Source: Octopus sinensis
Lineage: Eukaryota
DNA length: 64,000 bases
Direction: 5' to 3'
Assembly (NCBI RefSeq): GCF_006345805.1
Contig: NC_043000.1
Span: 113,088,001 to 113,152,000, forward strand
Below are positions 26 through 60,208 of this stretch, piece by piece. Below the pieces are notes generated by a model. The model searched no databases and was not told where the DNA came from. It saw nothing but the letters and a program-made list of their open reading frames with translations. Positions within the stretch are counted from its first letter, which is position 1, and each line of letters starts with the position of its first letter. The position numbers and the translations under genes were made by a program.

Positions 26-291
26 AGTGATATTATGTTGTCAACTTAATATGACAATCCCATGAAAGGGAAAAATGCTACTGTTATTTAACCCTAGGAA
101 ACAACGTTTCCTGTTGGACTTGACCCATTTCCTGTGTCATATTTTCAAAGGTGCTTGTCTCCAGTTTGAAAACATAAGGACACGGGAAATGTATCAAGTC
201 CAACAGGAAACGGTGTTTCCTAGGGCTACATAACAGTAGCATTGTACCCTTTCATGGGACTGTCACATTAAGTTGACAAAATACTATCACT
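26..291. mobile_element. Foldback/MITE-like palindrome, ~266 bp
   Basis: The left arm (agtgata..ttgtcaacttaat..cccatgaaaggg..ctaggaaac..gtttcctgttggacttga) is the imperfect reverse complement of the right arm, around a short central loop. Confidence 0.7.
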
Positions 292-4357: not shown

Positions 4358-4891
4358 TATATCAACGTAAACATATTCATTAACCCTCTATCTCTAAGTG
4401 TTACCCGCCATATAATGGGTAACTTTCTAGTAATACGTTTGCTACATTGGGTAATACCAAAGAATATGGCATACATACAGTATTTCATCATATTTGTTGG
4501 TACCTATATAACATGATGGATACTAATTTTCGAATGAAAAATATTTATCTTAAAATAAAATAAAACATTAGTAATTTCTCATTACTATAAATGCAATGAA
4601 AACGTTATTACTTTTCTGAATTTTATAATTTATTACAGAACCGTAATCAACTCCGACGAAAACCTATCCCTCATAATTTCATTAGAATGTGGAATGTTAT
4701 AAGACATTCTTCTCGTACCTCTTATGTTAACTTTCTCTGTATCACTCTTCTATTCTCTCTCTGCCTTTCTCTCCCTCTCTCTCTCTCCCTCTCCCTCTCT
4801 GTATTTCCAGGCGAACCATCTGACCAAGCAACTAAGAAACCAAATCACGATTCAATCAACTTATATATATATATATGTATATCGACTGGAA

Positions 4892-5880
4892 GGCGGCGAG
4901 CTGGCAGAAGCGTCTGTCTTTATGTTCTGAGTTCAAATCCTGCCGAGGTCGACTTTGCCTTTTATCATTTCGGGGTGGATAAATTAATTACCAGTTGCGT
5001 ACTGGTGTCGATATAATCGAATGGAACCCTCCCCAAAAATTCCGGGCCTTGTGCCTAGAGTAGAAAATATTCTTTGTATTACATTAAGGCGGCGATCTAG
5101 CAGAATTGTTAGCACGCCGGGCGAAATGCGTAGTCGTATTTCGTCTGCTGTTACGTTCTGAGTTCAAATTCCGCCGAGGTCTACTTTGCCTTTCATCCTT
5201 TCGGAGTCGATAAGTTAAGTACCAGTTACGCACTGGGTCCATGTAATCGACTTAATCCCTTTCACTGTCCTTGTTTGTCCTCTCTGTGTTTAGCCCCTTT
5301 AGGTAGTAAAGAAATAGGTATTTCGTCTGCTGCTACGTTCTGAGTTCAAATTCCGCCGAGGTCAACTTTGCCTTTCATCGTTTCGGGGTCGATTAAATAA
5401 GTACCAATTACGCACTGGGGTCGATATAATCGACTTAATCCGTTTGTCTGCCCTTGTTTGTCCTCTCTGTGTTTAGCCCCTTGTGGGTAGTAAAGAAATA
5501 GATATTCCGTCTGTCTTTCTTTACGTTCTCAGTTCAAATTCCGCTTAGGTCGGCTTTGCCTGTCATCCTTCCCTGTTCGGTAAATTAAGTACTAGTTGCG
5601 TACTGGGTCGATCTTATCGACTTGCTCCCCCTCCTCCAAATTTTCGGGCCTTGTGCCTAGAGTAGAAAGTATATTAAGACTAGCAGAATCGTTAGCACGC
5701 CGGACGGAATGCTTAGCGGTATTTCGCCCGTCGGTACGTTCTGAGTTCAAATTCCACAGAGGTTGACCTTGCCTATCATCCTTTCGGGATTGCTAAATTG
5801 AGTACCAGTTGAACACTGCGGTCGATTTGATCGACTATCCCCCTGTTCCACAATTTCGGGCCTTGTACCTAAAGCAGAAA
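4892..5880 (+). mobile_element. Cluster of about five head-to-tail SINE family A copies
   Basis: Recurrent gttctgagttcaaattccgccgaggtc core with two alternative tails. Confidence 0.9.
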
Positions 5881-9787: not shown

Positions 9788-10410
9788 TTTCAGCTTAGAG
9801 CTGCGGCCATGCTGATGAACCGCCGTTTTGCTACACTGTTATTACTAAGAGCCTCCTCTAATATATGGCACTTGGTGAAGCATGGAGTTTGATATAGCTA
9901 CCCTCATTTGCACCTCTTGCCGTGAGGTAGGTTCATCTGGGACTCTCGACAGGAAGAGATCCTGCTTTGATTTAAAAACCCCTACATCTACTTTGTGCAA
10001 GTTCCTCGGACACTTTGGGAGAATATGAAAAAGCTGTGGGCCCTTGAAACCCAGGCTGTTGCAGTAACTGGTCCTGGAGCGTGATAGCATTGCTGGGACC
10101 TTTGGCACTATGCAGTGTCGTCCCGTTCTAGCATTGGTGTAACATTCAATGCTAAAATTTGGCGCAATTCCTTCCAGGATCTTCCAGATATATATTACTG
10201 CATACCTCTTCCGTCTTCTCTCCAGGGAGTAGAGTCTTAGCTGTTTTAACCTTTCCCAGTAGCTGAGCTGTTGCAAAGAGACGATCTTCTTTGTGAATCT
10301 TCTCTGGATTGCTTCAAGGTCAGCTGTTAATTTCACACTGGTGGGTGACCATAGCTGTGAGCATTAATCCAGGTGACTGAGGACGAACGTTTGATTATAT
10401 TTATAATACC
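9788..10410 (-). mobile_element. CR1-clade LINE 3' fragment (ORF2 C-terminus plus 3' tail)
   Basis: ORF 9845-10336 (LEAIQRRFTKKI..YWERLKQLRLYSLERRR) is typical of a CR1 ORF2 end. Tail is cagcatggccgcagctctaagctgaaac. Confidence 0.9.
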
Positions 10411-12664: not shown

Positions 12665-12702
12665 ACTGCCGCTGCCGCTGCTGCTGTTTCTTCTTCTTTC
12701 AG

Positions 12703-12998
12703 TTGATCCGATCAACTGAACAGCCTGCTCGTGAAATTAACGTGCAAGTGGCTGAGTATTCCACAGACACGTTGTAACCTTAACGCAGTTCTCAGGGAGA
12801 TTCAGCGGGACACAGAACGTGATGAAGCTGGCCCCTCCTTTAAATTACAGGTACCACTCTCATTTGTGCCACCTGAGTGGACTGAAGCAATGTGAAATAA
12901 AGTGTTTTGCTCAAGGACACAACGCGACGCTGGGAATCGAACTCATGACATTGCGATCGTGGGCCAAATAGCCATAATCACTAAGCCACGCGCCTTCT
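12703..12998 (-). mobile_element. tRNA-derived SINE (B-type head, C-type tail)
   Basis: Head gaaggcgcgtggcttagtg. Tail cacgttaatttcacgagcaggctgttcagttgatcggatcaac is shared with family C. Confidence 0.85.
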
Positions 12999-14580: not shown

Positions 14581-14800
14581 GAAGTAAAGAAAAAAGAGGA
14601 AGGAGCGAAGTAATAAGAAGGGAGTGGTAGGTGTTAATTGGTGCAGTTGTGATGTGAATTTATAATTGAAAATGGAGAAATTTTACATATAGAATTGTGT
14701 AAAATTATGTAAAAGAACAATCACGGAGATAGGCAGAAATATAATTCTATACTTGCATGCAGAAACACATGCTTCGATAAACGAATACATATATACATGT

Positions 14801-15157
14801 GGAGGTACAATGGCTCAGTGGTTAAAGCAGCGGACTCGCGGTCAGATGTTCGCGGTTTCGATTCCCAGACCAGGTATTCTGAGAGTTTATTAAGCGAAAA
14901 TACCTAAATCTCAACGAGCGCGTGGTGGAAAAACCCTGCTGTATTCTTTCTCTCTCTTTCTTCCTGTTTCTGTTGTACCTGTATTTCAAAGGGCTAGGCT
15001 TGTCACGTTCTGTGTCACACTGAATCTCCCGGACTACTACGTTATGGGCACACGTGTCTGTGGAATGCTCAGTCACTTGCATGTTAATTTCACGAGCAGG
15101 TTGTTCCGCTGATCGGATCAACTGGAACCCTCGTCGTCGTAACCGACGCAGTGCCAC
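14801..15157 (+). mobile_element. tRNA-derived SINE, family C
   Basis: Head caatggctcagtggttaaagcagcggactcgcggtc..ttcgattccc. Matches 27394 and 59828. Confidence 0.9.
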
Positions 15158-15229
15158 GAGTGTATATACATACACAAACATAAGTTAGGTCGAGAGATGT
15201 AGACTTATAATAATAATTATAGCAACAAC

Positions 15230-15262
<33 letters not shown>

Positions 15263-15294
15263 TATATATATATGGATATATACATATATGTGTG

Positions 15295-15344
<50 letters not shown>

Positions 15345-15350
15345 ATATAT

Positions 15351-18300
15351 AATTTCAACAATTGAGGGCAAAATTAATTAATTATTAATCAATTTCACCA
15401 AGTGTTCAGTATGCAAAGGGACCATTCAAGGCGAATTCAAATTATTACATTATATAAAAGGGCTTAGTAAAATAAATTACTTTGCCGCATACTGAACTCA
15501 TTAGAAATAGCAGCTAAAAAACTTTTTTAAGGCTATTTCTAATACTTAAAGAAAATCTCTCTCATATATAGTGTTTGCATAATTTAACTCACAAAAGTTT
15601 GGGGGTAATGACATCGAAAAATCAAATGCTAAGGTTATTCGAGAACGTACGTTTCAAGATTAGTCAAAACAACATTTCTATCATCGGCTCGGAAATTCCT
15701 TGGTTTGGATTTGGAACACTGAAAATAAGAACATACCCTCTCGAAGATCTGCTCCCAACTAACAGTGTCAACAAATTCAAAATAAGCAAGCGAAGAATCT
15801 CTGTTCTCCCCTTTCCACCAGCGTGGGTTAAAATCATCAAACTCTATGCTTATTTCGGTAAAGTCCGAAGCATTAATCAGAGGGAGATTAATTATAATTT
15901 CAACAATTGAGGGCAAAATTAATTAATTATTAATCAATTTCACCAAGTGTTCAGTATGCAAAGGGACCATTCAAGGCGAATTCAAATATTACATTATATA
16001 AAAGGGCTTAGTAAAATAAATTACTTTGCCGCATACTGAACTCATTAGAAATAGCAGCTAAAAAACTTTTTTAAGGCTATTTCTAATACTTAAAGAAAAT
16101 CTCTCTCATATATAGTGTTTGCATAATTTAACTCACAAAAGTTTGGGGGTAATGACATCGAAAAATCAAATGCTAAGGTTATTCGAGAACGTACGTTTCA
16201 AGATTAGTCAAAACAACATTTCTATCATCGGCTCGGAAATTCCTTGGTTTGGATTTGGAAACACTGAAAATAAGAACATACCCTCTCGAAGATCTGCTCC
16301 CAACTAACAGTGTCAACAAATTCAAAATAAGCAAGCGAAGAATCTCTGTTCTCCCCTTTCCACCAGCGTGGGTTAAAATCATCAAACTCTATGCTTATTT
16401 CGGTAAAGTCCGAAGCATTAATCAGAGGGAGATTAATTATAATTTCAACAATTGAGGGCAAAATTAATTAATTATTAATCAATTTCACCAAGTGTTCAGT
16501 ATGCAAAGGGACCATTCAAGGCGAATTCAAATTATTACATTATATAAAAGGGCTTAGTAAAATAAATTACTTTGCCGCATACTGAACTCATTAGAAATAG
16601 CAGCTAAAAAACTTTTTTAAGGCTATTTCTAATACTTAAAGAAAATCTCTCTCATATATAGTGTTTGCATAATTTAACTCACAAAAGTTTGGGGGTAATG
16701 ACATCGAAAAATCAAATGCTAAGGTTATTCGAGAACGTACGTTTCAAGATTAGTCAAAACAACATTTCTATCATCGGCTCGGAAATTCCTTGGTTTGGAT
16801 TTGGAAACACTGAAAATAAGAACATACCCTCTCGAAGATCTGCTCCCAACTAACAGTGTCAACAAATTCAAAATAAGCAAGCGAAGAATCTCTGTTCTCC
16901 CCTTTCCACCAGCGTGGGTTAAAATCATCAAACTCTATGCTTATTTCGGTAAAGTCCGAAGCATTAATCAGAGGGAGATTAATTATAATTTCAACAATTG
17001 AGGGCAAAATTAATTAATTATTAATCAATTTCACCAAGTGTTCAGTATGCAAAGGGACCATTCAAGGCGAATTCAAATTATTACATTATATAAAAGGGCT
17101 TAGTAAAATAAATTACTTTGCCGCATACTGAACTCATTAGAAATAGCAGCTAAAAAACTTTTTTAAGGCTATTTCTAATACTTAAAGAAAATCTCTCTCA
17201 TATATAGTGTTTGCATAATTTAACTCACAAAAGTTTGGGGGTAATGACATCGAAAAATCAAATGCTAAGGTTATTCGAGAACGTACGTTTCAAGATTAGT
17301 CAAAACAACATTTCTATCATCGGCTCGGAAATTCCTTGGTTTGGATTTGGAAACACTGAAAATAAGAACATACCCTCTCGAAGATCTGCTCCCAACTAAC
17401 AGTGTCAACAAATTCAAAATAAGCAAGCGAAGAATCTCTGTTCTCCCCTTTCCACCAGCGTGGGTTAAAATCATCAAACTCTATGCTTATTTCGGTAAAG
17501 TCCGAAGCATTAATCAGAGGGAGATTAATTATAATTTCAACAATTGAGGGCAAAATTAATTAATTATTAATCAATTTCACCAAGTGTTCAGTATGCAAAG
17601 GGACCATTCAAGGCGAATTCAAATTATTACATTATATAAAAGGGCTTAGTAAAATAAATTACTTTGCCGCATACTGAACTCATTAGAAATAGCAGCTAAA
17701 AAACTTTTTTAAGGCTATTTCTAATACTTAAAGAAAATCTCTCTCATATATAGTGTTTGCATAATTTAACTCACAAAAGTTTGGGGGTAATGACATCGAA
17801 AAATCAAATGCTAAGGTTATTCGAGAACGTACGTTTCAAGATTAGTCAAAACAACATTTCTATCATCGGCTCGGAAATTCCTTGGTTTGGATTTGGAAAC
17901 ACTGAAAATAAGAACATACCCTCTCGAAGATCTGCTCCCAACTAACAGTGTCAACAAATTCAAAATAAGCAAGCGAAGAATCTCTGTTCTCCCCTTTCCA
18001 CCAGCGTGGGTTAAAATCATCAAACTCTATGCTTATTTCGGTAAAGTCCGAAGCATTAATCAGAGGGAGATTAATTATAATTTCAACAATTGAGGGCAAA
18101 ATTAATTAATTATTAATCAATTTCACCAAGTGTTCAGTATGCAAAGGGACCATTCAAGGCGAATTCAAATTATTACATTATATAAAAGGGCTTAGTAAAA
18201 TAAATTACTTTGCCGCATACTGAACTCATTAGAAATAGCAGCTAAAAAACTTTTTTAAGGCTATTTCTAATACTTAAAGAAAATCTCTCTCATATATAGT

Positions 18301-18610
18301 GTTTGCATAATTTAACTCACAAAAGTTTGGGGGTAATGACATCGAAAAATCAATGCTAAGGTTATTCGAGAACGTACGTTTCAAGATTAGTCAAAACAAC
18401 ATTTCTATCATCGGCTCGGAAATTCCTTGGTTTGGATTTGGAAACACTGAAAATAAGAACATACCTTCTCGAAGATCTGCTCCCAACTAACAGTGTCAAC
18501 AAATTCAAAATAAGCAAGCGAAGAATCTCTGTTCTCCCCTTTCCACCAGCGTGGGTTAAAATCATCAAACTCTATGCTTATTTCGGTAAAGTCCGAAGCA
18601 TTAATCAGAG
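15351..18610 (-). repeat. Tandem array of ~6 x 545-546 bp units, PLE/pLTR- or retrozyme-like
   Basis: Unit starts at 15351, 15896, 16441, 16987, 17533 and 18079. The last unit is about 14 bp short. Flanked by (TA)n on both sides. The array is certain; the PLE assignment is inference. Confidence 0.95.
15640..15691 (-). ncRNA. Type I hammerhead-ribozyme-like motif (also at 16184, 16730, 17276, 17822, 18367)
   Basis: Minus strand reads cgag-CCGATGA-t-aga(17 nt)tct-t-GAAA-cg-ta-cg-T-T-ctcg. Stem I is cgag/ctcg, stem III is palindromic aacgtacgtt, the triplet is GUU. The core deviates (U4C, U.U at 10.1/11.1). Confidence 0.5.
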
Positions 18611-18652
18611 TGTAGAATATATATAATATATATATATATATTATATATATAT

Positions 18653-18687
<35 letters not shown>

Positions 18688-18702
18688 GCATATATACATA
18701 CG

Positions 18703-18734
<32 letters not shown>

Positions 18735-18794
18735 TATATACGTACGTATATGTATATACTTACATATATACGTATATATATATATACGCATATG

Positions 18795-19049: not shown

Positions 19050-19829
19050 ATGAACGTAAATCTTCGTATTTCACCCTAAGCACCGGTAGCGTCAACCAGT
19101 TTTATCAAACGACCAGGGATGGAATGAACAACCTTCAGAAGAGTGCTGTCTGAGATATCATTGTGTGCCTCCTGCATCCGTGTCTCGAATCCTCCAATGA
19201 ACGAGGTTCTGTCTTGTACACCTCCTCTTTTGTGTAACTCCACGTGTAAAAATCACATGGATTGAGATCTGAACTTCTTGGGAGTTCTGGACTTCTGGAC
19301 TTCTGCGGTTAGACTCTTCAGGTTTTAGCCCCTGCACGTAATTGAGTTTCCACGAAGAAAAATCCAATTCTTTAGGCAACACCATACGTACTGTGTGTCT
19401 TGTTATTCCACTTTCGCGAGCTGCTTGACGTTGGCATTTGCGAGCTGTGAATGGACATTTTCTGCACTGTTGCTGCGTTCTCCGCTGGTTGGACGGCCAC
19501 TTCTACTTGCATCGTTCACGGAGCACGAGGTCATCAGCATTGCATGAAAACATTTCATTGTCTCCGGATGTAATGCTGAATGTTTACCTTTCGATGCACG
19601 CCACCATCTCTGAACCAAAACAATGGAATTCTACACTTCATGACGCGCTGGTATCTTAGCTCGCTCCTGAACAGTCAAGCAACCGGCCAACTGGAAAAAT
19701 AAGAAACAAGAAATAAGACAATGATTAAAATAACATTAGTGTTGCCTGTTTGATAAATGTTTCCGTTATGACTTCAGTGATACTAAGAATTCTATAAGCA
19801 ATGCCTAGTTACTTTCCATCCACCCTGTA
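19050..19829 (-). mobile_element. Degenerate Tc1/mariner transposon
   Basis: TA + CAGGGTGgatggaaagtaact TIR-like end at 19827. Decayed transposase segments VQRW..SVNDASRSGRP and WKLNYVQGLKPEESNRR. Confidence 0.75.
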
Positions 19830-20967: not shown

Positions 20968-21258
20968 ATGCGTATGACTTAGGGGTTTAGCCTATTCGGC
21001 TCACGATCAAGAATTAAGTTCTTGGCCACTCATTGCGTCCTTCAGCTAAACCTTTTTAATTTACGTTGCCCCAGTTCCTTCAGCTGTGAAAAAATGAGTT
21101 GTGGCTGTATTTGGAAGGACCAGCCTTCTCCCTAAGAACTGAGTTAAGTGAACGCGTGTCGGTAGGGTGGTCAACCACCTGCACGTTAATTTCAAGAGCA
21201 GGCTGTTCCGTCGACCGGATCAACTGGAAAAGTCGTCGTTATAAACGACGAGGAGCCA
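20968..21258 (+). mobile_element. Degenerate tRNA-derived SINE with C-type tail
   Basis: tattcggctcacgatc head remnant and cacgttaatttcaagagcaggctgttccgtcgaccggatcaactgg tail. Confidence 0.7.
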
Positions 21259-21874
21259 GGATACTAACCACATCTACTAATATTTACGACTTCAGATTGC
21301 CTCTGGAACAATTCTTTACATTAATTCGTGAATGGCATTTTTATAATTTTATTTGTTATCCGTACTGGTAATAATTTTCCTTATCAAAATTAATATTTTC
21401 CTTACCAAAGTCTTTATTTTGTTTTGCTTGTGTTTCCATTTTGTAAGTTGACACAATGTCTGTACGTTTAATTTTCACATTGTCAGCTTTTTAAAAAAAA
21501 TCTATTTTCGTGTATGAAAATAGTCGTAAACGTGTTTGTTTCCTTATTAACTTTCTTACGACGACCACTATAGCCAGCTTTTCTCCCTGCTGCTTCCAAG
21601 ACGGCCATCATGCAATGGAAAAGAAACGATGTAAATTGTTATTCTCCAAAGATTTATAGTTAGTCTGAAATACCTAAGAAAAAAAAGAGAAAAAAATCCT
21701 TTCTTCCTCGTCAGGTGATGTGGTGGACCCTTAAATAATCCAAAACACTTCTGTTAGTAAAACTCAATTAAAAAAAAAAGCCTGTTTTCCTTCGGGTAAT
21801 CTCGTTAAAATTTACTTTGTCACGAGATCTTTGGCATAGATGCCCGTTCTCTTGAACAATCAACTACAACAGCA

Positions 21875-24379: not shown

Positions 24380-24431
<52 letters not shown>

Positions 24432-24435
<4 letters not shown>

Positions 24436-24547
24436 ATGTGCGTGTGTTATCCTTTATCATTTACTGGTTTCAGCGTGAGGCTGTGTCCATGCTATAGTAT
24501 CGCCCATCAGTGTTTCGGGTTCTCCTTTCGGTACTGCTTACGTATAT

Positions 24548-24582
<35 letters not shown>

Positions 24583-24692
24583 TTGTATGTGCGTGTGTTA
24601 TCCTTTATCATTTACTGGTTTCAGCGTGAGGCTGTGTCCATGCTATAGTATCGCCCATCAGTGTTTCGGGTTCTCCTTTCGGTACTGCTTAC

Positions 24693-24693
<1 letters not shown>
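24432..24693. repeat. Exact 111-bp direct duplication (24432-24542 and 24583-24693) of a CR1/SINE-type tail
   Basis: Identical copies separated by (TA)n. Minus strand reads gcatggacacagcctcacgctgaaacc. Confidence 0.9.
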
Positions 24694-24729
<36 letters not shown>

Positions 24730-27393: not shown

Positions 27394-27743
27394 GAGGTGC
27401 AATGGCCCGGTGGTTAGGGCAGCGGACTCGCGGTCACAGGATCGCGGTTTCCGTCGCTATGAGGGCTTATTGAGCGAAAACACTTAAAGTTCCACGAGGC
27501 GCCAGCAGGAGGTGGTGGAGAACCCTGCTGTATTCTTTCACCACAACTTTCTGTCACTCTTTCTTCCTGTTTCTGTTGTACCTGTATTTCAAAAGAGGCC
27601 AGCCTTGTCACACTCTGTGTCACGCTGAATCTCTCTGACGTGTCTTTGGAGTACTCAGCCACTTGCATGTTAATTTCATGAGCAGGCTGTTCCATTGATC
27701 AGATCAACTGGAACCCTCGTCGTCGTAACCAACGGAATGCCAC
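27394..27743 (+). mobile_element. tRNA-derived SINE, family C
   Basis: Matches 14801 and 59828. Confidence 0.9.
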
Positions 27744-28439
27744 GTCAATAAGCTCGTAGATTTTGCTGTTTGATACTCTTTTAAAACTTTATAAACGCAA
27801 TTATTCCGGCGAGGATTCAGTGGTCATTATATAATTTCCCTAACATTAGAAATTCCTCGTTAAATACTTCAATCAAAACTCTGTATCTTCATCATTTACT
27901 GTTTTGTTGCTGTTTATGTTTTTTTTCTTCTGGTATTATCTAAGTTATGGCCTTCCACCTTCCATCGTATCTTACCCTTAATCATAACATTCTCAGCTTT
28001 GATCGCCTTGCTTTGTATACTCTCCAAACTTTATCCCTCACGTGTTATAGAGACCACTCCCTATTCTTTCTATTATTGCTACAGTGCCACTTTTCTCTTT
28101 GGAGTTTCCTGGGCAGCTGGTATCACCTCGGTTCGGATACATCCGACTGATATCTTTCCTTCTTTACTTTCATTGGTATTATTCACCAGAATTCCCATTT
28201 TCTTCGTTTACCAATCCTTCCTTCTTACAACATAATGTATTGGAACTTTTACCTCAACTAGGGGACATTATATTTCTTGGTCGTCCTTCCTAAAAGCATC
28301 GCTTCGGTCAGCCCTTTCTTCCGTATCTGTGTGTAGTGACATATTACAAAACAAGATTGATTTCTCATTTTCTCAGACTTTTCTCTTCTATGCCTATACC
28401 GGTTTTCTGTTGGCATTCCATAATGCCTTTTTTTTCTGG

Positions 28440-40427: not shown

Positions 40428-40874
<447 letters not shown>

Positions 40875-40904
40875 TAGTAGTAGTAGTATAGTAGTAGTAG
40901 TATA

Positions 40905-41571
40905 TATTTGGCTTTTCATTTGTATTTGTACAAGTTGACTCCAAGTCTCGCCCAGAGATCTCAAGAGACAACAAGTTAGAAGTTAAAGTTTGTGTTATGA
41001 GTAGGGTGCCATATATTTGGTTTTGCACAGATTCTAGAGAATCTGTCAAGACATAAGTAAATTAGAAGTCTGATTTTAAAAGTGATTTGATTATAAGATG
41101 ACAATAAAAGTTGTTTGCTGTTATGGACATTTAAAAGTATTTTGACACTGTTTACGAATTAAAATATATTTGGGATTACATACGCAATATTTTACGTAGG
41201 ATATGAGCAGTTCATATGAGCACTATTTTTTTCTTTAATTTCCTGGTATCTGAGCTAGGTAGCAATCAATCTTTTGTGCGATCATTCGCAGGGCACTTAC
41301 GACAACAGGTATTGTTTTAGACTTGAGGTTCCACATTTTTCCAATTTCTATATCAAGATCTTTATAATTGCTCAGTTTTAGTAGGTCTTGACAGTTACAT
41401 TTATATCGATTAGGACAATCATATCGATGAGGCGGCATGGCTTTTGTCTGAAATCCTTCACTATAATGTCTGGCCTACTTGCATCTAAATTTTGTCTGAA
41501 GTCCTTCAACATAACGTCTGAGCTTTATGCATCTATTTCGTCTAAAGTCCTTCAATATAATGTCTAAACTA
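40905..41571 (-). mobile_element. R4/Dong family 2, 3' fragment
   Basis: KLSNYKDLDIEIGKMWNLKSKTIPVVV. 3'UTR matches 55290-55365. Confidence 0.85.
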
Positions 41572-43094: not shown

Positions 43095-43919
43095 CTGTTG
43101 GTGATGATATTGATGACATGCATTCCGACAACAAATTCGGTATTGTTAATTATAAGAAATATCATAATGCCGTTCACGTCGATGATGGCGGTTGATATCG
43201 CCGATAAAAACGGCGTTTGTAATGATGATAATAAAACCGATAACGATGGGCAAAGAGGGACAGGCAAATTTCTATCTCGGCGGGGTTTCAACTTTGCGAA
43301 CAGTTTTACAGGAATAAATAGTCTCATATTGACTTTTGTGAAAGTGACCCTTTTTTTTTTTACTTTTAGCTCTACTAATAATTGAAATTATGCGCGCAGA
43401 GGTTTCACAGATGGGTTTGGCGGGGCCATGGGTGGAGTCATGAATCCCTTCTGCGCATACTCGGTCATTTTCCGAGTTTTGCTTATACGCGTGCTGAAAT
43501 GCTCCTGGTTTGGGGTAAAGGAAGTATAGGAGGTTCAGCTAATTATCATTTTATTCAATATATAATACCCCTCAGATTCGCACACATATTGCAGTGGTCC
43601 TTCAGTTTCTAAGCCCTGTAAAATAACTCGGAAGGTCATCAGGAGAAAATGCGTGCCGTTCCGATACACTTGCTGTCTTCTGGTATTCAGAACTTTCGAC
43701 CAGTAGTACCTGCGTGAGCAAGTTGTTTGCAAAAGCATCTGATTTTATTCAATATATTCCCCTCTCAGATTCACACACTTATTGCAGTGGTACTTCAGTT
43801 TTTCCAAGCCCTGTAAAAGAACTCAGAGTGTTGGGATTCCAGCCAGGTTGGTTTTTTGCGAAACCCACGCTGTAATTACGTCGGCCAATTGTCGTTACAT
43901 GTACGAAAGTTTCGAACAT

Positions 43920-44170: not shown

Positions 44171-47100
44171 TTCAATAGTTTTATTTTTATAGCGTGCTTT
44201 CACTTCACTACCGAGCACAGCTCCGTGTGCCTTGGGTATGTGCTGTGATTTGTTGTGATGCTCTGATGGTTATTGTATGGAAAGTGTTCTGCGTAGGATG
44301 TGTGCAGTGCCTAGTAGTGCAATTTTCTGTATGTTATATGTGTTTGTAAGTCCTGGTGTTTTTGTTATGTATTTGTCTGAATATTTTTTATCATGCCTAA
44401 TGCACCTACTATGATAGGAATTGTTTCTGTTTTTAGATTCCACATTCTGGTTACCTCTATTTCCAGGTCTTTGTATTTTGAAAGTTTCTCCATTTCTTTT
44501 AGAGACACGTTGTCATCAGCCGGTATTGATACATCAATTAGAAAGCATTTTTTTTTCTTCATGATCTCTGACAACTATATCTGGTCTGTGGGTCTTAATT
44601 TCTCTATCTGTGTGTATCGGCATATCCCAGAGTATGGTTGCTTTCTCGTTTCTGTGACCTTTTCTTTTTGGTGTGTGCCTATACCATCTTTTTTCTGTTG
44701 TTATTCCATAATGTTGGCATAGCTTCCAGTGTATGTAGGTTCCAATTCTGTCATGTCTGTGAATATATTCCTTCTTAGCCAGGACTGGGCAGCCAGAGAT
44801 AATATGATTTATTGTTTCTTGTCCATCTCCACATATTCTGCAGTTACTTGTAATATTTCTTTTCATTACATGTTTTTGGTAATTTCTGGTGGGGAGGCTT
44901 TGGTCTTGTGCTGCAATTACGAATCCCTCTGTCTCTGCTTGCTTTGAGTCCTGAGCTTCTCAACCATTGCTGGGATTTTTCTTTGTCTATTTCTTTTGCA
45001 TTTAGTTTAGTCCAGTATTTACCATGAAGGGGCTTTTCTTGCCATCGTTTTATCATGGTTCTTTGCTGTTCTAGTTTTAGTTTGGATTTCATTTGTTTTA
45101 TAGCTTTTGTTGTTTGTATTCTTCTTCTTCTTCTTCTTCTTCTTCTCTTCGTCTTCTTCTTCTTCTTATTTCTTCTTTTCTTCTCTTCTTCTTCTTCTTC
45201 TTCTTCTTCTTCATATTTATTAGGTGGTATGATTCTTGTTTGCATTGTCAGCTTCCTTAAATATTGAGAACAGTTTTTTTTTTTTGTTTGCCCGTGTTTT
45301 GCGCCGCTATTTGTATCAGTTTTCTTCCTTCTGAAGTAGATATTTTTGCAGTCCTATGGTGGTTATTTTATAGTAGTTTTCCAGCTGTATAAGGCCTCTA
45401 CCACCTTCTATACGTTGCATGTATAGTCTTTCTATGTCAGATTTTGGGTGATGCATCCTAGATCCTGTCATTATTTTTCTTGTTTTCCTATCTATTTTGG
45501 TCAGTTCATTTCGTGTCCAGTTAAGGATATTGTAGCTGTAACTTATAACTGGGACAGCTAAAGTGTTGATACCTATTATCTTGTTTTTAGCATTGAGCTC
45601 TGTTTTTAGTATTGATCTAACTCGTCGATAATATTCTTTTTTTATTTTCTCTTTTATTTGTGTGTGTTGTGTCTTATCTAGTTCATGGATTCCTAAGTAT
45701 TTGTAAGTTTGGCTTTGGTCTAATTCTTTTATTTCATTGGTTTTATCTAGTGTGATGTTGCTACTCTTTACTAGTTTTCCTCTTTTCAGGGTTACTTTGG
45801 CGCATTTTTCTAATCCAAATTTCATATCTATTTCTTTGGTAAATCCATGAACTCTCTTTAATAGTGTTTCCAGCTGTTTGTCATTTGCAGCGTATAGTTT
45901 TTAGGTCATCCATGTATAAAAGGTGGCTGATCGTTTTGCCGTAACATTTATATCCGCAACCAGTTCTATTTAGCATATCAGATAGAGGTGACAGTGCCAA
46001 GCAGAAAAGGAGTGGAGAGAGCGTGTCTCCCTGGAATATTCCTCTTCTAATGGGGATGGCTTTGGTTTTCACGAGTCCCTCTTTTGTTTGGAGCTGTAGC
46101 CATTTATTCGTAGAATGTCCTATGAATTTTATAATTGTTGGTGCTACTTTGTTAATGGCTAGTGTTTCGAGGATCCATGTGTGTGGGATGCTATCAAACG
46201 CCTTTTTGTAGTCGATCCAGGCCATACTGAGGCCTTTCTTCTTTCTGTGGCTGTCTTCAGTTATGGCTTTATTAATCATTAGTTGATCTTTACAGCCATA
46301 TGAGCCTTTGCGGCATCCTTTCTGCTCTTCTGGAAACAGGTTGTTTTCGTCCAGGTGCTTGTTCAACCGTTGCGATATCACTGCAGTAAATGCCTTGTAC
46401 ATTGTAGGGAGATGGGTCATTGGTCTGTAGTTTTCTGGTTTTGCTATCTCATTTGATTTGGGAATTAAGATGGTTTTCCCCTTCGTGAGCCATTCAGGCA
46501 TTGTCTCTGGCTCTGCTAGTATGTTGTTAAAGTTTTTAGCCAGCTTTTTGTGCATTCCTGTTAGATATTTCAACCAGAAGTCGGGGATCTTGTCATGCCC
46601 AGGTGCCTTCCAGTTGCTTAGTCTTTGCAGTGCCTGGGTGACCTCTTCAGTTGTTATGGGGGTCCAAAGTTGCTCAGATGCTGAGTTTGTTGTTTTAATA
46701 CTCCCTTTTTTTGGTTGTTCGTTCGCCGAACATATTTCTCTCCAGAATTCTTCTACTTCTTCTGCCGTTGGTGCTGCAGTGATTTCTATTTTATTTTTGC
46801 GAAGTTCTTGGTAGAACTTTTGGGGGTTGGAGTTGAACTTTTTGTTTTGTTCAAAGAAGCACAGGCGTTTCTCGTACCGGCGGGTCCTTTGTGCTTTGGC
46901 AAGGATATCTTGCTTTAGCTTTTCTTTTATCTCAGGTAAATCTTTCTCTGTGATGTATTTGCGGAGTATTTTTGTTTTCTTTTTGTTGCTCAGTAGCGTT
47001 GATTGTCTACTGACTTCATTAAGAATCGACAGATCTTTTCTCATTTTTTGTATTTTATTTTGGATGTTATTTATCCACAGGGTTTGTTTGGGTGGTGGTA

Positions 47101-48317
47101 CTCCTGTTTGGATGGGTTTGAGTGAGTATCCAGCTTCCTTTGTGGCTGTAGTGGCTGCTGCGTATACTTAGTCATTTAGCTCAGTGATATCGCTTTTTGT
47201 TTCAGTGGCTATTAGTTCCATGACGGCTAGGTTTATGCTGTTTATAATTGGTGTTGTTGTTTCGTCTATTTTGATTCTTGGGAGGTATGGTCGGTGGTCC
47301 ATTTTGAGCTCTGTGGTTTTTAGTTCTTTGATTATTCTACTTTTTATATTCTCATAATCATTAGGCTCCCCTTCGTTGTTTCCAGGTTTTAGATTTGTGT
47401 CGCTTTCGTTCTCATTTGTATGTTTGTTTGTCGTGTATTATTATGCATCCTTACGGTCTGGGTTTGTTGTTTTTTGTTTACATCGTGTTTGTTGGGAATG
47501 TTACGTTTGTCTTCGTGTTTTACTGTTTCAGTGTTTATATTGTTGGGCATTGTTGTGTGGCTTCTATCTACATTTTCCTGATGTATTTTTTCTTTTAGCT
47601 GTTCTATTTCTATTTCTGATATTTTTTTTGCGTTAAGAATGTATCTTCGTACGTTAGCTAGTTTATTAGGGTTCATTGCTGTATCCAAGTCTATATTTAT
47701 GTTATTTTCCTTCCATATTTTATATGTATGTGTTGTTGTGTTTTCATTTTTTGGGTAGAGCACTGCTGTGAAGTAAGCGTGTAGGATAGAAATGTATTCC
47801 TCACGTGTCCATTTATGTCTTTTGGGTTTTATTTGCGGGACATGAGGAACAACGTCCGACCCATTATTTTGACGGTCCTCATTTCCGTAGAGTACCGATC
47901 CGTTCATTTCTGTTGTCACATTGTTTTGCACGTGTAGTTTTTCGAACATTTTGTGTTGTAAGTTTAAAGTACGTACTTCCCGATTGTTATTCTTGGGTTG
48001 AATAATATCGGTGTTATTTAATTTCTTCGTAGATTTTTGTATATGGTGTTTGGGGTCGGGGATGGTCTGGTGTTGATGATCGTTATATTCCACGCATGTT
48101 TACATGTGTTGTGTTAGAGGTGGATATGATATCGAGTTAAAATACGTCATTTCGTTTCGAAAATAGTAATAAATTTCAATGAGTATTACTTACTCGGATA
48201 TAGTCCAATCCTTTGTTAGTAAACTTTTGGCTCCATACGATGTCTTTGTTTTCGATGTTTGTGGATAGATTTCGGTGCTCTGTTTTATCGTTCTCACATC
48301 TTAAACGTCCACGGTGT
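44171..48317 (-). mobile_element. Near full-length R4/Dong-clade non-LTR retrotransposon (myb-like N-terminus, RT, CCHC, RLE), inactivated
   Basis: RHKWTREEYISILHAYF; KAPGHDKI; NYRP; WIDYKKAFDS; GIFQGDTLSP; HLLYMDDLK; CRICGDGQETINHIISGC; [22 protein letters not shown]. Frameshifts and stops split the ORF. Confidence 0.95.
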
Positions 48318-50469: not shown

Positions 50470-50992
50470 CAGTTGAGCCGAGGTCGACTTTGCCTTTCAT
50501 CTTTTCGGGGTCGATTAAATAATTACCACTTACGCACTGGGGTCGATATAATCGACGTAATCCGTTTGTCTCTCCTTGTTTGTCCCGTCTGTGTTTAGCC
50601 CCTTGTGGGTAGTAAAGAAATAGGTATTTCGTCTGTCTTTACGTTCTGAGTTCAAATTCCGCCGAGGTCGACTTTGCTTTTCATCCTTTCGGGGAACGAT
50701 AATTAAGTACCAGTTGCTCCTCCTCCTTAAAAAATTCGAGCCTTGTGCCGGGAGTAGAAAAGAATATTTCGTCATGTTAACGCGGTGACCTGGCAGAAAC
50801 GTTAGCACGCCGATCGATGTGCTTAGCGGTATTTCTGTTTTTACGTTCTGAGTTCAAATTCCGCCGAGGTACACTTTGGATTTCATCCTTTCGGGATCGA
50901 TAAATTAAGTACTAGTTGCGCACCGAGGTTGATCTAATCGACTGGTCCCCTCCCCGAAATTTCAGGCCGTGTGCCTAGAGTAGAAAATAATA
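50470..50992 (+). mobile_element. Tandem SINE family A cluster (about three partial copies)
   Basis: Same core and two tails as 4892-5880. Confidence 0.9.
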
Positions 50993-54001: not shown

Positions 54002-55364
54002 AGTTTCAATATTGTTAACTGGTCAATTACTGAAATATGTCAGCTCGACAGAAAAATAAGGAAACTGTTGACAATGCATAGAATGCACCACCCTAAGGCA
54101 GATACAGAATGACTCTATCTGCCAAGAAAAGAGGGAGGCCGTGGTCTTTCGCAACTGGCAATAACAATGAAGATTGCTACAATTGGCCTAGACACCTACC
54201 TGAAAAACTCTGAGGACTGGATGTTAAAACTTGTCTCAAAACATGAAAACAAGAAAGCATCATACTCAGTCACAAAACAGGCAAAAGAATATTAAGTGAA
54301 TTCCGAATACAACCAATTTCGGAATTAGAGATAGACAACAAGAAAACAAGCACAGAAAAAGCTAGGCGCATGAAAACCCGTGCCAAAACTGCGGCCTTAG
54401 ATATTCTGAATAATAAATGGCAAGAAAAATCTCTCTATAGCAAATATCCAAAGAGAGCGAATAATGCAGATATCGACAAAGCTTTGACCCATCAATGGCC
54501 TCTGGCTTAAAATCTGAAACAGAGGGGTTTATCATAGCAGCTCAAGATCAATGCCTACCAACAAGAAACTACCAGACCAACATATTAAAGAACGGCAGTA
54601 GCCCAACATGTCGTGTATGCCGACAACAAAATGAAACCATTGATCATGTGGTCTCCAAATGCAGTCTTCTAGCGCCTACAGAGTACCTCAATAGGCATGA
54701 TGGATCTGCACAATATATTCACTGGGTAATTTGCAAAAACCTGGATTTGCCCTATGAAAAAAACTGGTGGGAACACAATCCACCTCCAGTGCTTAAAATG
54801 ACCACATCTCACTCCTCTGGAACTTCACCATTCAAACTGACAGGAAGATAGATGCAAATAGGCCAGATATCATATCGAAAGACTTCAGACAAAGAACATG
54901 CCTCCTCATTGATATGACTGTCCCAATCGATATAAACGTATCTGTCAAGACTAGCAAAAACTGAGCAAATATAAAGATCTTGAAATAGAAATCAGCAAAA
55001 TGTGGAAGCTGAAGTCTAAAAACAATACCTGTTGTCATAGGTGCCCTGGGAATGATAGCGAAAGGGATGATTGCTACACTAACTCAGATACCAGGAAACC
55101 CCAAAAATGGCAGAAATTCAAAAGATAGTGCTCATGGGAACTGCTCATATCCTACGCAAAATACTCTCTATGTAATCCCAAGGTTTAAAACAAATTTTTT
55201 TTTCTTTAATTTTATTTTTTATGTATTAGACTAGTACAACACCAAAACAACCCCAGAAAAAACCCCCAAATATATGGCACAGAACTTCCAACATGTTGTC
55301 TCTTGAGGTCTCTGGGTGAGACTTGGAGCCAACTTGTACAGACATAAAGCAAAAGTCAAACATA

Positions 55365-55628: not shown

Positions 55629-55858
55629 TCGCTCTACATTTTAGATTGATGTAATGATTGCATTGCTCAGTGAAATGAAGTTGCATGAAACGATCGTACT
55701 GCATTACCTCTGGATAGCTTTTTTGGTTACTTTGATTTTACTCACTACACTTTGAAATTGTATGGATAATACCGTACTAAATTCTGGTGCCTCAGCTTAA
55801 GTAACATATTAATCTGAATCTAAATTTTTGCTATATGTGTGCGCGTGTGTGTGGGTTT

Positions 55859-57740: not shown

Positions 57741-57840
57741 NNNNNNNNNNNNNNNNNNNNNNNNNNNNNNNNNNNNNNNNNNNNNNNNNNNNNNNNNNNN
57801 NNNNNNNNNNNNNNNNNNNNNNNNNNNNNNNNNNNNNNNN
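57741..57840. other. Assembly gap (100 N)
   Basis: Run of N. Confidence 1.
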
Positions 57841-59827: not shown

Positions 59828-60208
59828 GGAGGCGCAATGGCCCAGTGGTTAGGGCAGCGGACTCGCGGTCGTAGGATCGCGGTTTCGATTCCCAGACTGG
59901 GCGTTGTGAGTGTTTATTGAGTGAAAACACCTAAAGCACCACGAGGCTCCGGCAGGGATGGTGGTGATCCCTGCTGTACTCTTTCACCACAACTTTCTCT
60001 CACTCTTACTTCCTGTTTCTGTTGTACCTGTATTTCAAAGGGCCGGCCTTGTCACTCTCTGTGTCACGCTGAATATCCCCGAGAACTGCGTTAAGGGTAC
60101 ACGTGTCTGTGGAGTGCTCAGCCACTTACACGTTAATTTCACGAGCAGGCTGTTCCGTTGATCGGATCAACCGGAACCCTCATCGTCGTAACCGACGGAG
60201 TGCTTCCA
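59828..60208 (+). mobile_element. tRNA-derived SINE, family C (well preserved)
   Basis: ggaggcgcaatggcccagtggttagggcagcggactcgcggtcgtaggatcgcggtttcgattccc head with A/B-box-like motifs. Confidence 0.92.

What the first reader, a model, noticed from the sequence alone, without database searches (positions are those of the whole stretch)
15351..18610. Six-unit 546-bp tandem array with a hammerhead-ribozyme-like fold in every unit (retrozyme or circRNA candidate)
Seen: each unit's minus strand contains cgag-CCGAUGA-u-aga(loop)ucu-u-GAAA-cg(ua)cg-U-U-cucg, at 15640, 16184, 16730, 17276, 17822 and 18367. This is type I hammerhead order, with a 4-bp stem I and a self-complementary stem III (aacguacguu). 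Established: minimal type I hammerheads with palindromic stem III occur in Penelope-like pLTRs and in tandem non-LTR retrozymes, which can cleave as dimers and yield circRNAs. Inference: a read-through transcript could be cut into 546-nt monomers, with neighbouring copies supplying dimer partners. Caveats: the core has U4C, a U.U pair at 10.1/11.1, a weak stem II and a GUU triplet, so it may be inactive.
Basis: partly seen in the sequence, partly recalled or inferred. Interest (0 to 1): 0.85.

Follow-up and report, generated by a model that had tools for sequence, protein, structure and literature searches.

The report
Young 546-bp tandem repeat, doubtful hammerhead
Six almost identical head-to-tail copies of a 546-bp non-coding sequence really sit here inside a TA microsatellite, and each carries a string that can be drawn as a minimal hammerhead ribozyme, but every test I could run rates that ribozyme as a near-miss, so this is probably an ordinary young repeat and at best a decayed or weak retrozyme.

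Summary
Window 15351-18610 holds six head-to-tail units (periods 544-546 bp, last unit cut at position 532). The quoted 52-nt minus-strand string is present without mismatch at all six coordinates. The units are effectively identical, so the six motifs count as one independent observation and give no covariation.

The hammerhead reading is only partly supported.
- In favour: type I order, a 4-bp helix I, an 8-nt palindromic helix III of the kind seen in validated mussel and axolotl retrozyme hammerheads, a GUU triplet, a low-GC unit of typical size and copy number, an unusually self-paired unit, and (TA)n on both flanks, which is a known target of Penelope-like elements.
- Against: C at core position 4, U.U at 10.1/11.1, and a 3-bp A/U-rich helix II with a 17-nt loop. 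No Rfam hammerhead match appears even at E<=10 on 91 nt. A covariance model built from four validated retrozyme hammerheads gives 10.2 bits (E 1.4), no better than two background sites. The fold costs +0.4 to +3.2 kcal/mol, against -7.3 for a competing hairpin.
- No other copy was found anywhere I could search.

Best reading: a very young DNA-level tandem amplification (about 0.5). Main rival: a retrozyme-like element with a weak or decayed hammerhead (about 0.3).

The parts
15351..18610 (.). Six-unit head-to-tail array of a 546-bp unit with 33% GC. Units: 15351-15894, 15895-16440, 16441-16986, 16987-17532, 17533-18078, 18079-18610. The last unit ends at unit position 532.
15640..15691 (-). 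Hammerhead-like 52-mer, copy 1. The putative cleavage after GUU would fall between + coordinates 15644 and 15643.
   Evidence: direct reading
16184..16235 (-). Hammerhead-like 52-mer, copy 2 (putative site 16188/16187).
16730..16781 (-). Hammerhead-like 52-mer, copy 3 (putative site 16734/16733).
17276..17327 (-). Hammerhead-like 52-mer, copy 4 (putative site 17280/17279).
17822..17873 (-). Hammerhead-like 52-mer, copy 5 (putative site 17826/17825).
18367..18418 (-). Hammerhead-like 52-mer, copy 6 (putative site 18371/18370).
16590..16633 (.). Near-perfect palindrome within the unit (21-nt arms, 2-nt spacer), shown for unit 3 and repeated in every unit. Together with the 11-bp inverted repeat 16494-16504 / 16577-16587 it accounts for much of the unit's unusual self-complementarity.
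15207..15351 (.). Left flank: (ATA)n 15207-15266, then (TA)n 15263-15351, running straight into unit 1.
18617..18786 (.). Right flank: imperfect (AT)n microsatellite, beginning 7 nt after the last unit.
14800..15160 (.). SINE-like dispersed repeat. Its microsatellite tail is the site where the array sits. Other copies lie at 59828-60203, 27394-27744, 12697-12857 and 21127-21261.

Best explanation
This is a very young tandem repeat made at the DNA level, not a working ribozyme array. A 546-bp, AT-rich, non-coding and palindrome-rich segment lies within a (TA)n microsatellite at the tail of a SINE-like repeat, in a microsatellite-rich animal genome. The segment was amplified head-to-tail to six copies.

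Shown: the array, the near-identity of its copies, its flanks, its lack of coding homology, and the exact motif string.

Inferred: the route of amplification, by unequal exchange or replication slippage seeded by the AT-rich unit junction and the flanking microsatellite, or by re-insertion of an extrachromosomal multimer. Also inferred: that the copies have had no time to diverge.

The minus-strand 52-mer resembles a minimal type I hammerhead, either by coincidence or as a decayed remnant. In its present form it has C4, U.U at 10.1/11.1, a 3-bp A/U-rich helix II with a 17-nt loop, and a competing hairpin that buries GAAA and helix III. It is therefore not expected to cut transcripts into monomers at a useful rate.
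For: - The units differ from one another only by three 1-nt homopolymer length changes, one C>T substitution, a 1-nt difference at the unit 1/2 junction and the truncated end of unit 6. This indicates one recent amplification, and the motif copies are not independent.
- The array is bounded by (TA)n on both sides. The unit junction ...GATTAATTATAAT... is itself AT-rich.
- The sequence just after the last unit aligns weakly to the missing unit end (score reached by 5% of flank 16-mers), so the array may be a whole number of units, as in-situ duplication predicts.
- The same window holds another (TA)n-X-(TA)n-X-(TA)n duplication at 24390-24726.
- No hammerhead family matches: at gathering score on the window, at E<=10 on the array, or at E<=10 on 91 nt around one motif.
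- A covariance model from four validated retrozyme hammerheads scores the motif 10.2 bits, E 1.4. Background sites 55649-55704 and 43176-43216 score 10.7 and 10.6.
- The proposed fold is +3.2 kcal/mol (best constrained +0.4) against an MFE of -7.3 with a different hairpin, and z = 0.09 versus shuffles.
- Helix II alone is +0.6 kcal/mol. The double hammerhead is -8.2 against -18.9 kcal/mol.
- No second copy of the unit exists in the other 60 kb. None was found in metagenome or viral contigs. No related protein or ORF was found.
Against: - The motif has more hammerhead detail than a loose match needs. An 8-nt perfect palindrome sits exactly between GAA and the UH cleavage dinucleotide, which lowers the chance rate of my fitted descriptor to 0.1 per Mb or less.
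- That layout is the one seen in validated mussel and axolotl retrozyme ribozymes.
- The unit is unusually self-paired (z -5.0 on the motif strand, -4.4 on the other). Most background 546-nt segments fall between -3.5 and +2. Retrozyme RNAs are described as highly self-paired (PMC7229834).
- Head-to-tail multicopy insertions into (TA)n are a known habit of Penelope-like elements (PMC8557442).
- The junction carries no long (TA)n, unlike the 24390-24726 duplication.
Confidence: 0.5

Rival explanations
1. A retrozyme-like non-autonomous retroelement. A multimeric minus-strand RNA, or a 546-nt circle copied round and round, was reverse-transcribed by a Penelope-like element's machinery into a (TA)n target. 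This left six head-to-tail copies, each with a minimal type I hammerhead that acts weakly as a double hammerhead through its palindromic helix III, or that has decayed (U4 to C).
For: - Type I order, a 4-bp helix I, a nucleotide between A9 and helix II, a palindromic A-CGUACG-U helix III and a GUU triplet.
- The same layout occurs in validated ribozymes: mussel Mg353 (3-bp helix II, A-CGCGCG-U) and axolotl Ax353 (U.U plus 3 bp, A-CACGUG-U).
- The fitted descriptor with a palindromic helix III is rare by chance.
- Unit length of 546 bp and six copies fall inside the published ranges: 51-972 bp, and most families have at most 7 units.
- GC is 33%.
- The RNA is strongly self-paired, more so on the motif strand.
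- (TA)n lies on both sides, and (TA)n is a preferred Penelope-like target with head-to-tail insertions.
- U4C kept a viroid infectious.
Against: - The defining conserved core is not met (C4).
- The highly conserved G10.1-C11.1 pair is absent.
- Helix II is 3 A/U-rich base pairs with a 17-nt loop, where minimal hammerheads of Penelope-like elements have 6-8 bp.
- No Rfam hit was found. The custom model gives E 1.4, equal to background.
- The fold is energetically disfavoured.
- The array ends lie about 250 bp from the predicted cleavage site.
- No other copy and no recognisable Penelope-like ORF was seen in the window, although that search was not exhaustive.
Confidence: 0.3
2. The array belongs to, or was made by, another kind of mobile DNA. 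Examples are the internal tandem region of a larger transposon, or a DNA-level rolling-circle (Helitron-like) tandem insertion. In that case the hammerhead-like string is irrelevant.
For: - The unit is rich in inverted repeats and hairpins on both strands.
- A short hairpin (TTCGG...CCGAA) lies about 18 nt before the array's right end.
- The neighbourhood is dense in transposon debris.
Against: - No terminal inverted repeats, no Helitron-type termini and no transposase homology were found around the array.
- The flanks outside the microsatellites are unique or SINE-like.
- Pfam found nothing in the adjacent ORFs.
Confidence: 0.08
3. The copy number or the near-perfect identity is partly an assembly product: a real repeat whose length was mis-estimated, or whose copies were homogenised by polishing.
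For: - Three of the differences between units are 1-nt homopolymer length changes, typical of long-read errors.
- The window comes from a scaffolded assembly with a 100-N gap at 57741-57840.
Against: - The array has clean, different flanks on each side.
- It has a truncated last unit and one real substitution (18466).
- Nothing in the sequence indicates a join.
Confidence: 0.07

Closest known systems
[quoted passage not shown]
   Same: Head-to-tail array, unit length within 51-972 bp, copy number at or below 7 as in most families, low GC, a strongly self-paired predicted RNA, and one type I hammerhead-shaped motif per unit with a palindromic helix III.
   Different: The core is CCGAUGA, not CUGANGA. 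There is no G10.1-C11.1 pair. Helix II is A/U-rich with a 17-nt loop. No covariance-model support, no dispersed copies, no expression data, and no Penelope-like partner seen.
Axolotl HHR_Amex2 / Rtz Ax353 ribozyme (PMC7229834)
   Same: A U.U mismatch at the base of helix II followed by 3 bp. An 8-nt palindrome forms helix III (ACACGUGU there, ACGUACGU here). Weak as a monomer and expected to need a dimer.
   Different: Ax353 keeps the full CUGAUGA core, has G/C pairs in helix II with a 5-nt loop, and has a 6-bp helix I. It was shown to cleave, 22% per hour as a monomer.
Mussel retrozyme Mg353 ribozyme (PMC7229834)
   Same: A helix II of only 3 bp, and a helix III of A-CGCGCG-U with the same 6-nt palindromic insert format. 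It sits in an AT-rich repeat of about 350-390 bp.
   Different: It has a canonical core and a G10.1-C11.1 pair, a 7-nt loop 2, thousands of genomic copies, and demonstrated cleavage and circRNAs.
Minimal hammerheads in the pseudo-LTRs of Penelope-like elements (PMC4209133)
   Same: A short helix I (4-5 bp), an extra nucleotide after A9, palindromic positions 15.2-16.2 and loop 3, tandem context, and low or no activity as single motifs.
   Different: Those have a long helix II (6-8 bp), a conserved G10.1-C11.1 pair and an intact core, and they flank an RT/GIY-YIG ORF. None of this is seen here.
Hammerhead satellites: newt satellite 2, Schistosoma Sm-alpha, Dolichopoda pDo500 (about 500 bp; PMC2837043)
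   Same: A satellite-type tandem repeat of a few hundred bp with one hammerhead per unit. Double-hammerhead models have been proposed for these.
   Different: In pDo500 the ribozyme region is measurably more conserved than the rest across 198 sequences, with compensatory changes. No such evidence can be obtained here.
Ordinary microsatellite-flanked tandem duplications and young macrosatellites
   Same: Near-identical copies, AT-rich junctions, microsatellites at both ends, no coding content, and a second example in the same window (24390-24726).
   Different: The unit's strong self-complementarity and its hammerhead-shaped string are not expected of arbitrary sequence.

Membership tests
Hammerhead ribozyme (type I; Rfam hammerhead families) | Conserved core C3 U4 G5 A6 N7 G8 A9 ... 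G12 A13 A14 | tested here: not met
   The sequence reads CCGAUGA...GAAA, so position 4 is C in all six copies. U4C lowers activity in vitro but has one viable natural precedent (PMC3088659).
Hammerhead ribozyme (type I; Rfam hammerhead families) | Helix II closed by a 10.1-11.1 base pair (usually G-C) and stable enough to form | tested here: not met
   U.U at 10.1/11.1, then AGA/UCU with a 17-nt loop. The helix alone is +0.6 kcal/mol, and the best extended form is -0.5. A U.U precedent exists in axolotl Amex2, but with G/C pairs behind it.
Hammerhead ribozyme (type I; Rfam hammerhead families) | A15.1-U16.1 pair and an NUH cleavage triplet followed by the helix I 3' strand | tested here: met
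   GAAA-CGUACG-U-U-CUCG gives A15.1/U16.1, the triplet GUU, and CUCG pairing with CGAG (direct reading).
Hammerhead ribozyme (type I; Rfam hammerhead families) | Scores as a member with covariance models of the family | tested here: not met
   No match at gathering score, at E<=10 on the array, or at E<=10 on 91 nt. The custom model from four validated retrozyme hammerheads gives 10.2 bits, E 1.4, matched by two background sites.
Hammerhead ribozyme (type I; Rfam hammerhead families) | The three-helix junction is an accessible fold | tested here: not met
   The hammerhead fold is +3.2 kcal/mol (+0.4 best) against an MFE of -7.3 that pairs GAAA and helix III elsewhere. Its ensemble probability is 6e-9. 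The dimer form is -8.2 against -18.9 kcal/mol. Tertiary contacts are not modelled.
Hammerhead ribozyme (type I; Rfam hammerhead families) | Conservation and covariation of the helices among relatives | not testable with these tools
   The six copies are identical in the motif. No relative was found in any collection I could search.
Hammerhead ribozyme (type I; Rfam hammerhead families) | Site-specific self-cleavage | not testable with these tools
   This needs transcription and cleavage assays.
Metazoan non-LTR retrozyme | Head-to-tail repeats of a short unit (published range 51-972 bp), low GC | tested here: met
   546 bp in six copies, 33% GC.
Metazoan non-LTR retrozyme | Each unit carries a type I hammerhead with the conserved catalytic centre (CUGANGA / GAAAY / RUH) | tested here: not met
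   GAAAC and GUU fit, but CCGAUGA does not. The criterion is quoted from the supplement of PMC7229834.
Metazoan non-LTR retrozyme | Highly self-paired monomer RNA | tested here: met
   z is -4.9 to -5.0 on the minus strand and -3.7 to -4.4 on the plus strand. Background segments are mostly -3.5 to +2. 65% of bases are paired in the circular MFE.
Metazoan non-LTR retrozyme | A multi-copy family dispersed in the genome, co-existing with Penelope-like elements | not testable with these tools
   Only one 64-kb window is available. It holds no other copy and no recognisable Penelope-like ORF among the ORFs inspected, a search that was not exhaustive.
Metazoan non-LTR retrozyme | Expressed as linear and circular monomer RNAs | not testable with these tools
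   No transcript data are available.
Penelope-like element minimal hammerhead (pseudo-LTR) | Long helix II (6-8 bp) with conserved G10.1-C11.1 | tested here: not met
   Here helix II is 3 bp, A/U-rich, and closed by U.U.
Penelope-like element minimal hammerhead (pseudo-LTR) | Short helix I (4-5 bp), an extra nucleotide between 9 and 10.1, and palindromic 15.2-16.2 / loop 3 | tested here: met
   CGAG/CUCG, a U after GAUGA, and the perfect palindrome ACGUACGU.
Penelope-like element minimal hammerhead (pseudo-LTR) | Lies in repeats flanking an RT plus GIY-YIG ORF | tested here: not met
   The array is flanked by microsatellites, a SINE-like repeat and unique sequence. The only RT in the window is a LINE at 44.5-48.1 kb.

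The most novel reading that the evidence does not exclude
The motif is a naturally active hammerhead variant that tolerates C4, a U.U closing pair and a 3-bp A/U helix II. It would do so by working only as a double hammerhead across neighbouring units through its 8-bp palindromic helix III. It would process minus-strand read-through transcripts of a 546-nt retrozyme into monomers that are ligated into circRNAs. The array would be a fresh insertion into a (TA)n target by a Penelope-like element.
Probability: 0.08. Interest if true: 0.55.

Novelty: new member of a known kind. Interest (0 to 1): 0.27.

Why it matters
If the best reading holds, this is one more young tandem repeat in a microsatellite-rich genome. 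It also shows that a tandem array multiplies one near-miss motif into six apparent confirmations.

If the rival holds, it would be a new retrozyme family in an under-sampled animal lineage. It would be caught right after insertion into a (TA)n target, which would support the proposed link between retrozymes and Penelope-like elements. Its core variant (C4 with U.U at 10.1/11.1) would extend the known sequence tolerance of natural hammerheads. Retrozymes and their hammerheads are already well described, so neither outcome opens a new category.

Tried and rejected
1. Rfam was run at three stringencies: the whole window at gathering score, the array at E<=10, and 91 nt at E<=10. There was no hammerhead or other ribozyme match. 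The only hit was an 8.3-bit sR12 snoRNA chance match.

2. I tested whether the unit is coding.
- Pfam on the unit's ORFs gave nothing meaningful.
- A word-indexed search of 5.8 billion proteins with five concatenated reading frames gave no hit.
- An exhaustive phmmer search of the 80-aa minus-strand ORF gave two hits. Both were inflated by internal repeats and both were rejected.
- P0121 is a conceptual protein over an 872-bp, 50% GC tandem repeat in GCA_015501595.1. It shares only FERxCSxFxCF with the ORF and has no DNA similarity to the unit.
- P0122 is a repeat protein matched at 31% identity over three stretches; I take it to be bacterial (my reading of its sequence, not checked).

3. I looked for relatives at the DNA level.
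- A specific 25-base gapped pattern found 0 hits in metagenome contigs.
- A looser 19-base pattern found 106 hits, about the number I expected by chance from my own rough estimate of the collection's size (not computed). None shared more than the pattern with the unit.
- Viral contigs gave 0 hits.

4. I tried to identify the organism. The window's own ORFs are not on record. The LINE RT's best hits are only about 50% identical, and the named ones are Penaeus and other animals. The contigs of the top hits were uninformative. The source stays 'a microsatellite-rich animal, possibly a decapod crustacean', which is my inference.

5. I read the ORF fragments at 19079-19656 as a mariner-like remnant. 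Pfam did not confirm this.

6. I considered Helitron-type ends for the unit and rejected the idea, because there are no TC...CTRR termini.

7. The first background z-score run timed out and was repeated on a smaller scale.
Full report
**1. The observation**

Window 15351-18610 contains six head-to-tail copies of one unit, with start-to-start spacing 544, 546, 546, 546, 546. Tandem Repeats Finder did not list the array only because its longest period is 500.

Units 3-5 are identical. Unit 1 lacks one A of an A-run and one base at the junction. Unit 2 lacks one T of a TT. Unit 6 lacks one A of an A-run, has one C>T (18466) and stops at unit position 532. Three of the differences are homopolymer length changes, which may be sequencing errors, so the copies are effectively identical.

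Its anatomy is as described:
- CGAG / CCGAUGA / U / AGA-17 nt-UCU / U / GAAA / CGUACG / U / U / CUCG.
- This is type I order with a 4-bp helix I.
- It has C instead of U at core position 4 and U.U at 10.1/11.1.
- Helix II is 3 bp.
- ACGUACGU is a perfect palindrome from A15.1 to U16.1, and the triplet is GUU.

**2. The surroundings**

The window is animal DNA. Perfect microsatellites make up 13% of it. It also holds LINE fragments, a dispersed SINE-like repeat and a 100-N scaffold gap.

The array sits inside a TA microsatellite:
- A SINE-like repeat (14800-15160, with four other copies in the window) is followed by (ATA)n and then (TA)n (15207-15351), which runs directly into unit 1.
- Seven bases after the last unit an imperfect (AT)n runs from 18617 to 18786.

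The unit is 33% GC and has no other copy in the remaining 60 kb.

Its reading frames have no homologues:
- Pfam gave nothing.
- A word-indexed search with five concatenated frames gave no hit.
- An exhaustive phmmer search gave two spurious, repeat-inflated hits.

The unit is therefore non-coding.

**3. Is the motif a hammerhead?**

Tests that could have supported it did not.
- No Rfam family matches at gathering score on the window, at E<=10 on the array, or at E<=10 on a 91-nt stretch around one motif.
- I built a covariance model from the four retrozyme hammerheads that Cervera and de la Pena cloned and showed to cleave: coral Amil224, mussel Mg353, and axolotl Ax353 and Ax330 (PMC7229834 Suppl. 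Table 2).
- Run with filters off, that model scores the array motif 10.2 bits (E 1.4). Two unrelated sites, 55649-55704 and 43176-43216, score 10.7 and 10.6.
- The 52-mer's minimum-energy fold (-7.3 kcal/mol, z = 0.09 against shuffles) is a different hairpin that pairs GAAA and the helix III bases with the loop of helix II.
- The proposed hammerhead fold costs +3.2 kcal/mol, or +0.4 with the best extension of helix II.
- Helix II alone is +0.6 kcal/mol.
- A Forster-type double hammerhead between two copies reaches -8.2 kcal/mol, thanks to the 8-bp intermolecular helix III (-9.8). The competing dimer fold is -18.9.

**4. What speaks for it nevertheless**

Each single defect has a precedent.
- U4C considerably decreases activity in vitro but left a viroid infectious (PMC3088659).
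- Axolotl HHR_Amex2 has a U.U at the base of helix II and still cleaves, 22% per hour as a monomer and much better as a dimer (PMC7229834).
- The mussel retrozyme ribozyme has only 3 bp in helix II.

The format 'A + 6-nt palindrome + U' of helix III is exactly that of mussel (ACGCGCGU) and axolotl Ax353 (ACACGUGU).

A descriptor allowing just the liberties taken here occurs 3.4-12 times per Mb in Markov-random sequence. That is 0.2-0.8 per window, and 0.002-0.007 per unit. Requiring the perfect palindrome lowers the rate to 0.1 per Mb or less. ACGTACGT itself is about four-fold enriched here, because it occurs inside TA microsatellites.

That descriptor was fitted after the fact and overstates significance. 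The a-priori model (E 1.4 per window, about 0.01 per unit) is the fairer figure.

The unit as a whole is unusually self-complementary:
- z is -4.9 to -5.0 on the motif strand and -3.7 to -4.4 on the other.
- Of 28 background strand-segments, 26 lie between -3.5 and +2.1. The other two are the two strands of one obvious foldback.
- In a circular fold 65% of bases are paired.

Retrozyme RNAs are described as highly self-paired. Published retrozyme consensus lengths span 51-972 bp, and 75% of families have at most seven units. Penelope-like elements, the proposed mobilisers, prefer (TA)n targets and make head-to-tail multicopy insertions (PMC8557442).

**5. Weighing the evidence**

All six motifs descend from one very recent event, so they add nothing to one another. 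The motif's identity across copies says nothing about selection. About 0.5 of the few differences would be expected to fall in the motifs by chance, and none did.

I judge the motif to be only a few-fold more likely under a retrozyme origin than under chance. A real retrozyme would usually show a canonical core and score far higher, whereas a match at the 10-bit level occurs in about 1% of random units. The self-pairing and the (TA)n context add perhaps another ten-fold. Retrozymes are a small minority of all tandem arrays with units of a few hundred bp.

My estimates are:
- About 0.5 for a DNA-level amplification with a fortuitous or long-dead motif.
- About 0.3 for a retrozyme-like element. 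Roughly 0.1 of that is for a ribozyme that actually cleaves.
- The rest for another mobile-DNA origin or an assembly effect.

Points in favour of in-situ amplification:
- The AT-rich junction.
- A possibly integral number of units. The 16 nt after the array align weakly with the missing unit end, at p about 0.05.
- A second (TA)n-flanked duplication in the same window at 24390-24726.

The array ends lie about 250 bp from the predicted cleavage site. A linear, ribozyme-processed multimer was therefore not the inserted template. A circle copied by rolling reverse transcription is not excluded.

**6. Comparison with known systems**

The array works like, or mimics, a metazoan non-LTR retrozyme or a classical hammerhead satellite (newt satellite 2, Schistosoma Sm-alpha, Dolichopoda pDo500). 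It cannot be filed as a member.
- The defining conserved core is tested and not met.
- Model-based membership is tested and not met.
- Dispersal, expression, cleavage and covariation are untestable here.

For pDo500 the case rested on the ribozyme region being more conserved than the rest across 198 sequences, with compensatory changes (PMC2837043). That is the kind of evidence missing here.

**7. Verdict**

The array is a new instance of a known kind of thing whichever reading is right. Interest is low to moderate (0.27).

The decisive data are a genome-wide census of the unit and of Penelope-like elements, strand-specific and circular RNA evidence, and a cleavage assay of monomer and dimer transcripts with a C4U revertant and catalytic-core mutant controls.

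Noticed in passing
window 26-138 and 179-291: A 113-nt inverted repeat, 89% complementary, with a 40-nt spacer. The 546-nt segment 51-596 folds with z about -15 on both strands. It looks like a foldback or MITE-like element.
   Followed up: partly
window 24390-24726: A (TA)n-X-(TA)n-X-(TA)n arrangement. X is about 110 bp, the two copies are 100% identical over 127 nt, and the period is 151. This is a second young duplication bounded by TA microsatellites in the same window.
   Followed up: partly
window 14800-15160; also 59828-60203, 27394-27744, 12697-12857 (-), 21127-21261: A dispersed SINE-like repeat family, 74-82% identical between copies. The copy at 14800-15160 ends in the (ATA)n/(TA)n tail that hosts the 546-bp array. 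ARAGORN finds no tRNA-like head.
   Followed up: partly
window 44534-48093 (-), 54495-54851 (+), 9845-10336 (-), 40525-41049 (-): A LINE with a 387-aa RT ORF (45881-47044). Its best database relatives are only about 50% identical; the named ones are Penaeus and other animals. There are also several LINE 3' fragments; two of them carry a zinc-binding RT tail domain, below Pfam's own cut-off.
   Followed up: partly
window 19079-19656 (-): ORF fragments just right of the array look to me like an internally deleted Tc1/mariner-type transposase (...DASRSGRP......SSDLNPCDF...). Pfam did not confirm this.
   Followed up: partly
window 57741-57840 and the whole window: A 100-N scaffold gap. Perfect microsatellites cover 13% of the window, and TRF lists 149 rows. 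This extreme SSR load is compatible with a decapod-crustacean-like genome, but that is my inference.
   Followed up: no
window 4866-5818 and 50585-50925: A 139-nt repeat family with six copies in two clusters, at irregular spacing (231, 182, 401; 202).
   Followed up: no
L109 (GCA_015501595.1, contig JADNRX010001010.1) 3001-13956: An 872-bp, 50% GC tandem repeat in an unrelated assembly is annotated as a 1222-aa protein. It surfaced only through a repeat-inflated 18-aa chance match and is unrelated to the unit at the DNA level.
   Followed up: yes
window 55649-55704 (+) and 43176-43216 (+): Background sites that score as well as the array motif (10.7 and 10.6 bits) with the covariance model built from validated retrozyme hammerheads. 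In the printed alignments the first lacks the CUG of the core and the second skips helices II and III. They serve as chance-level controls.
   Followed up: yes
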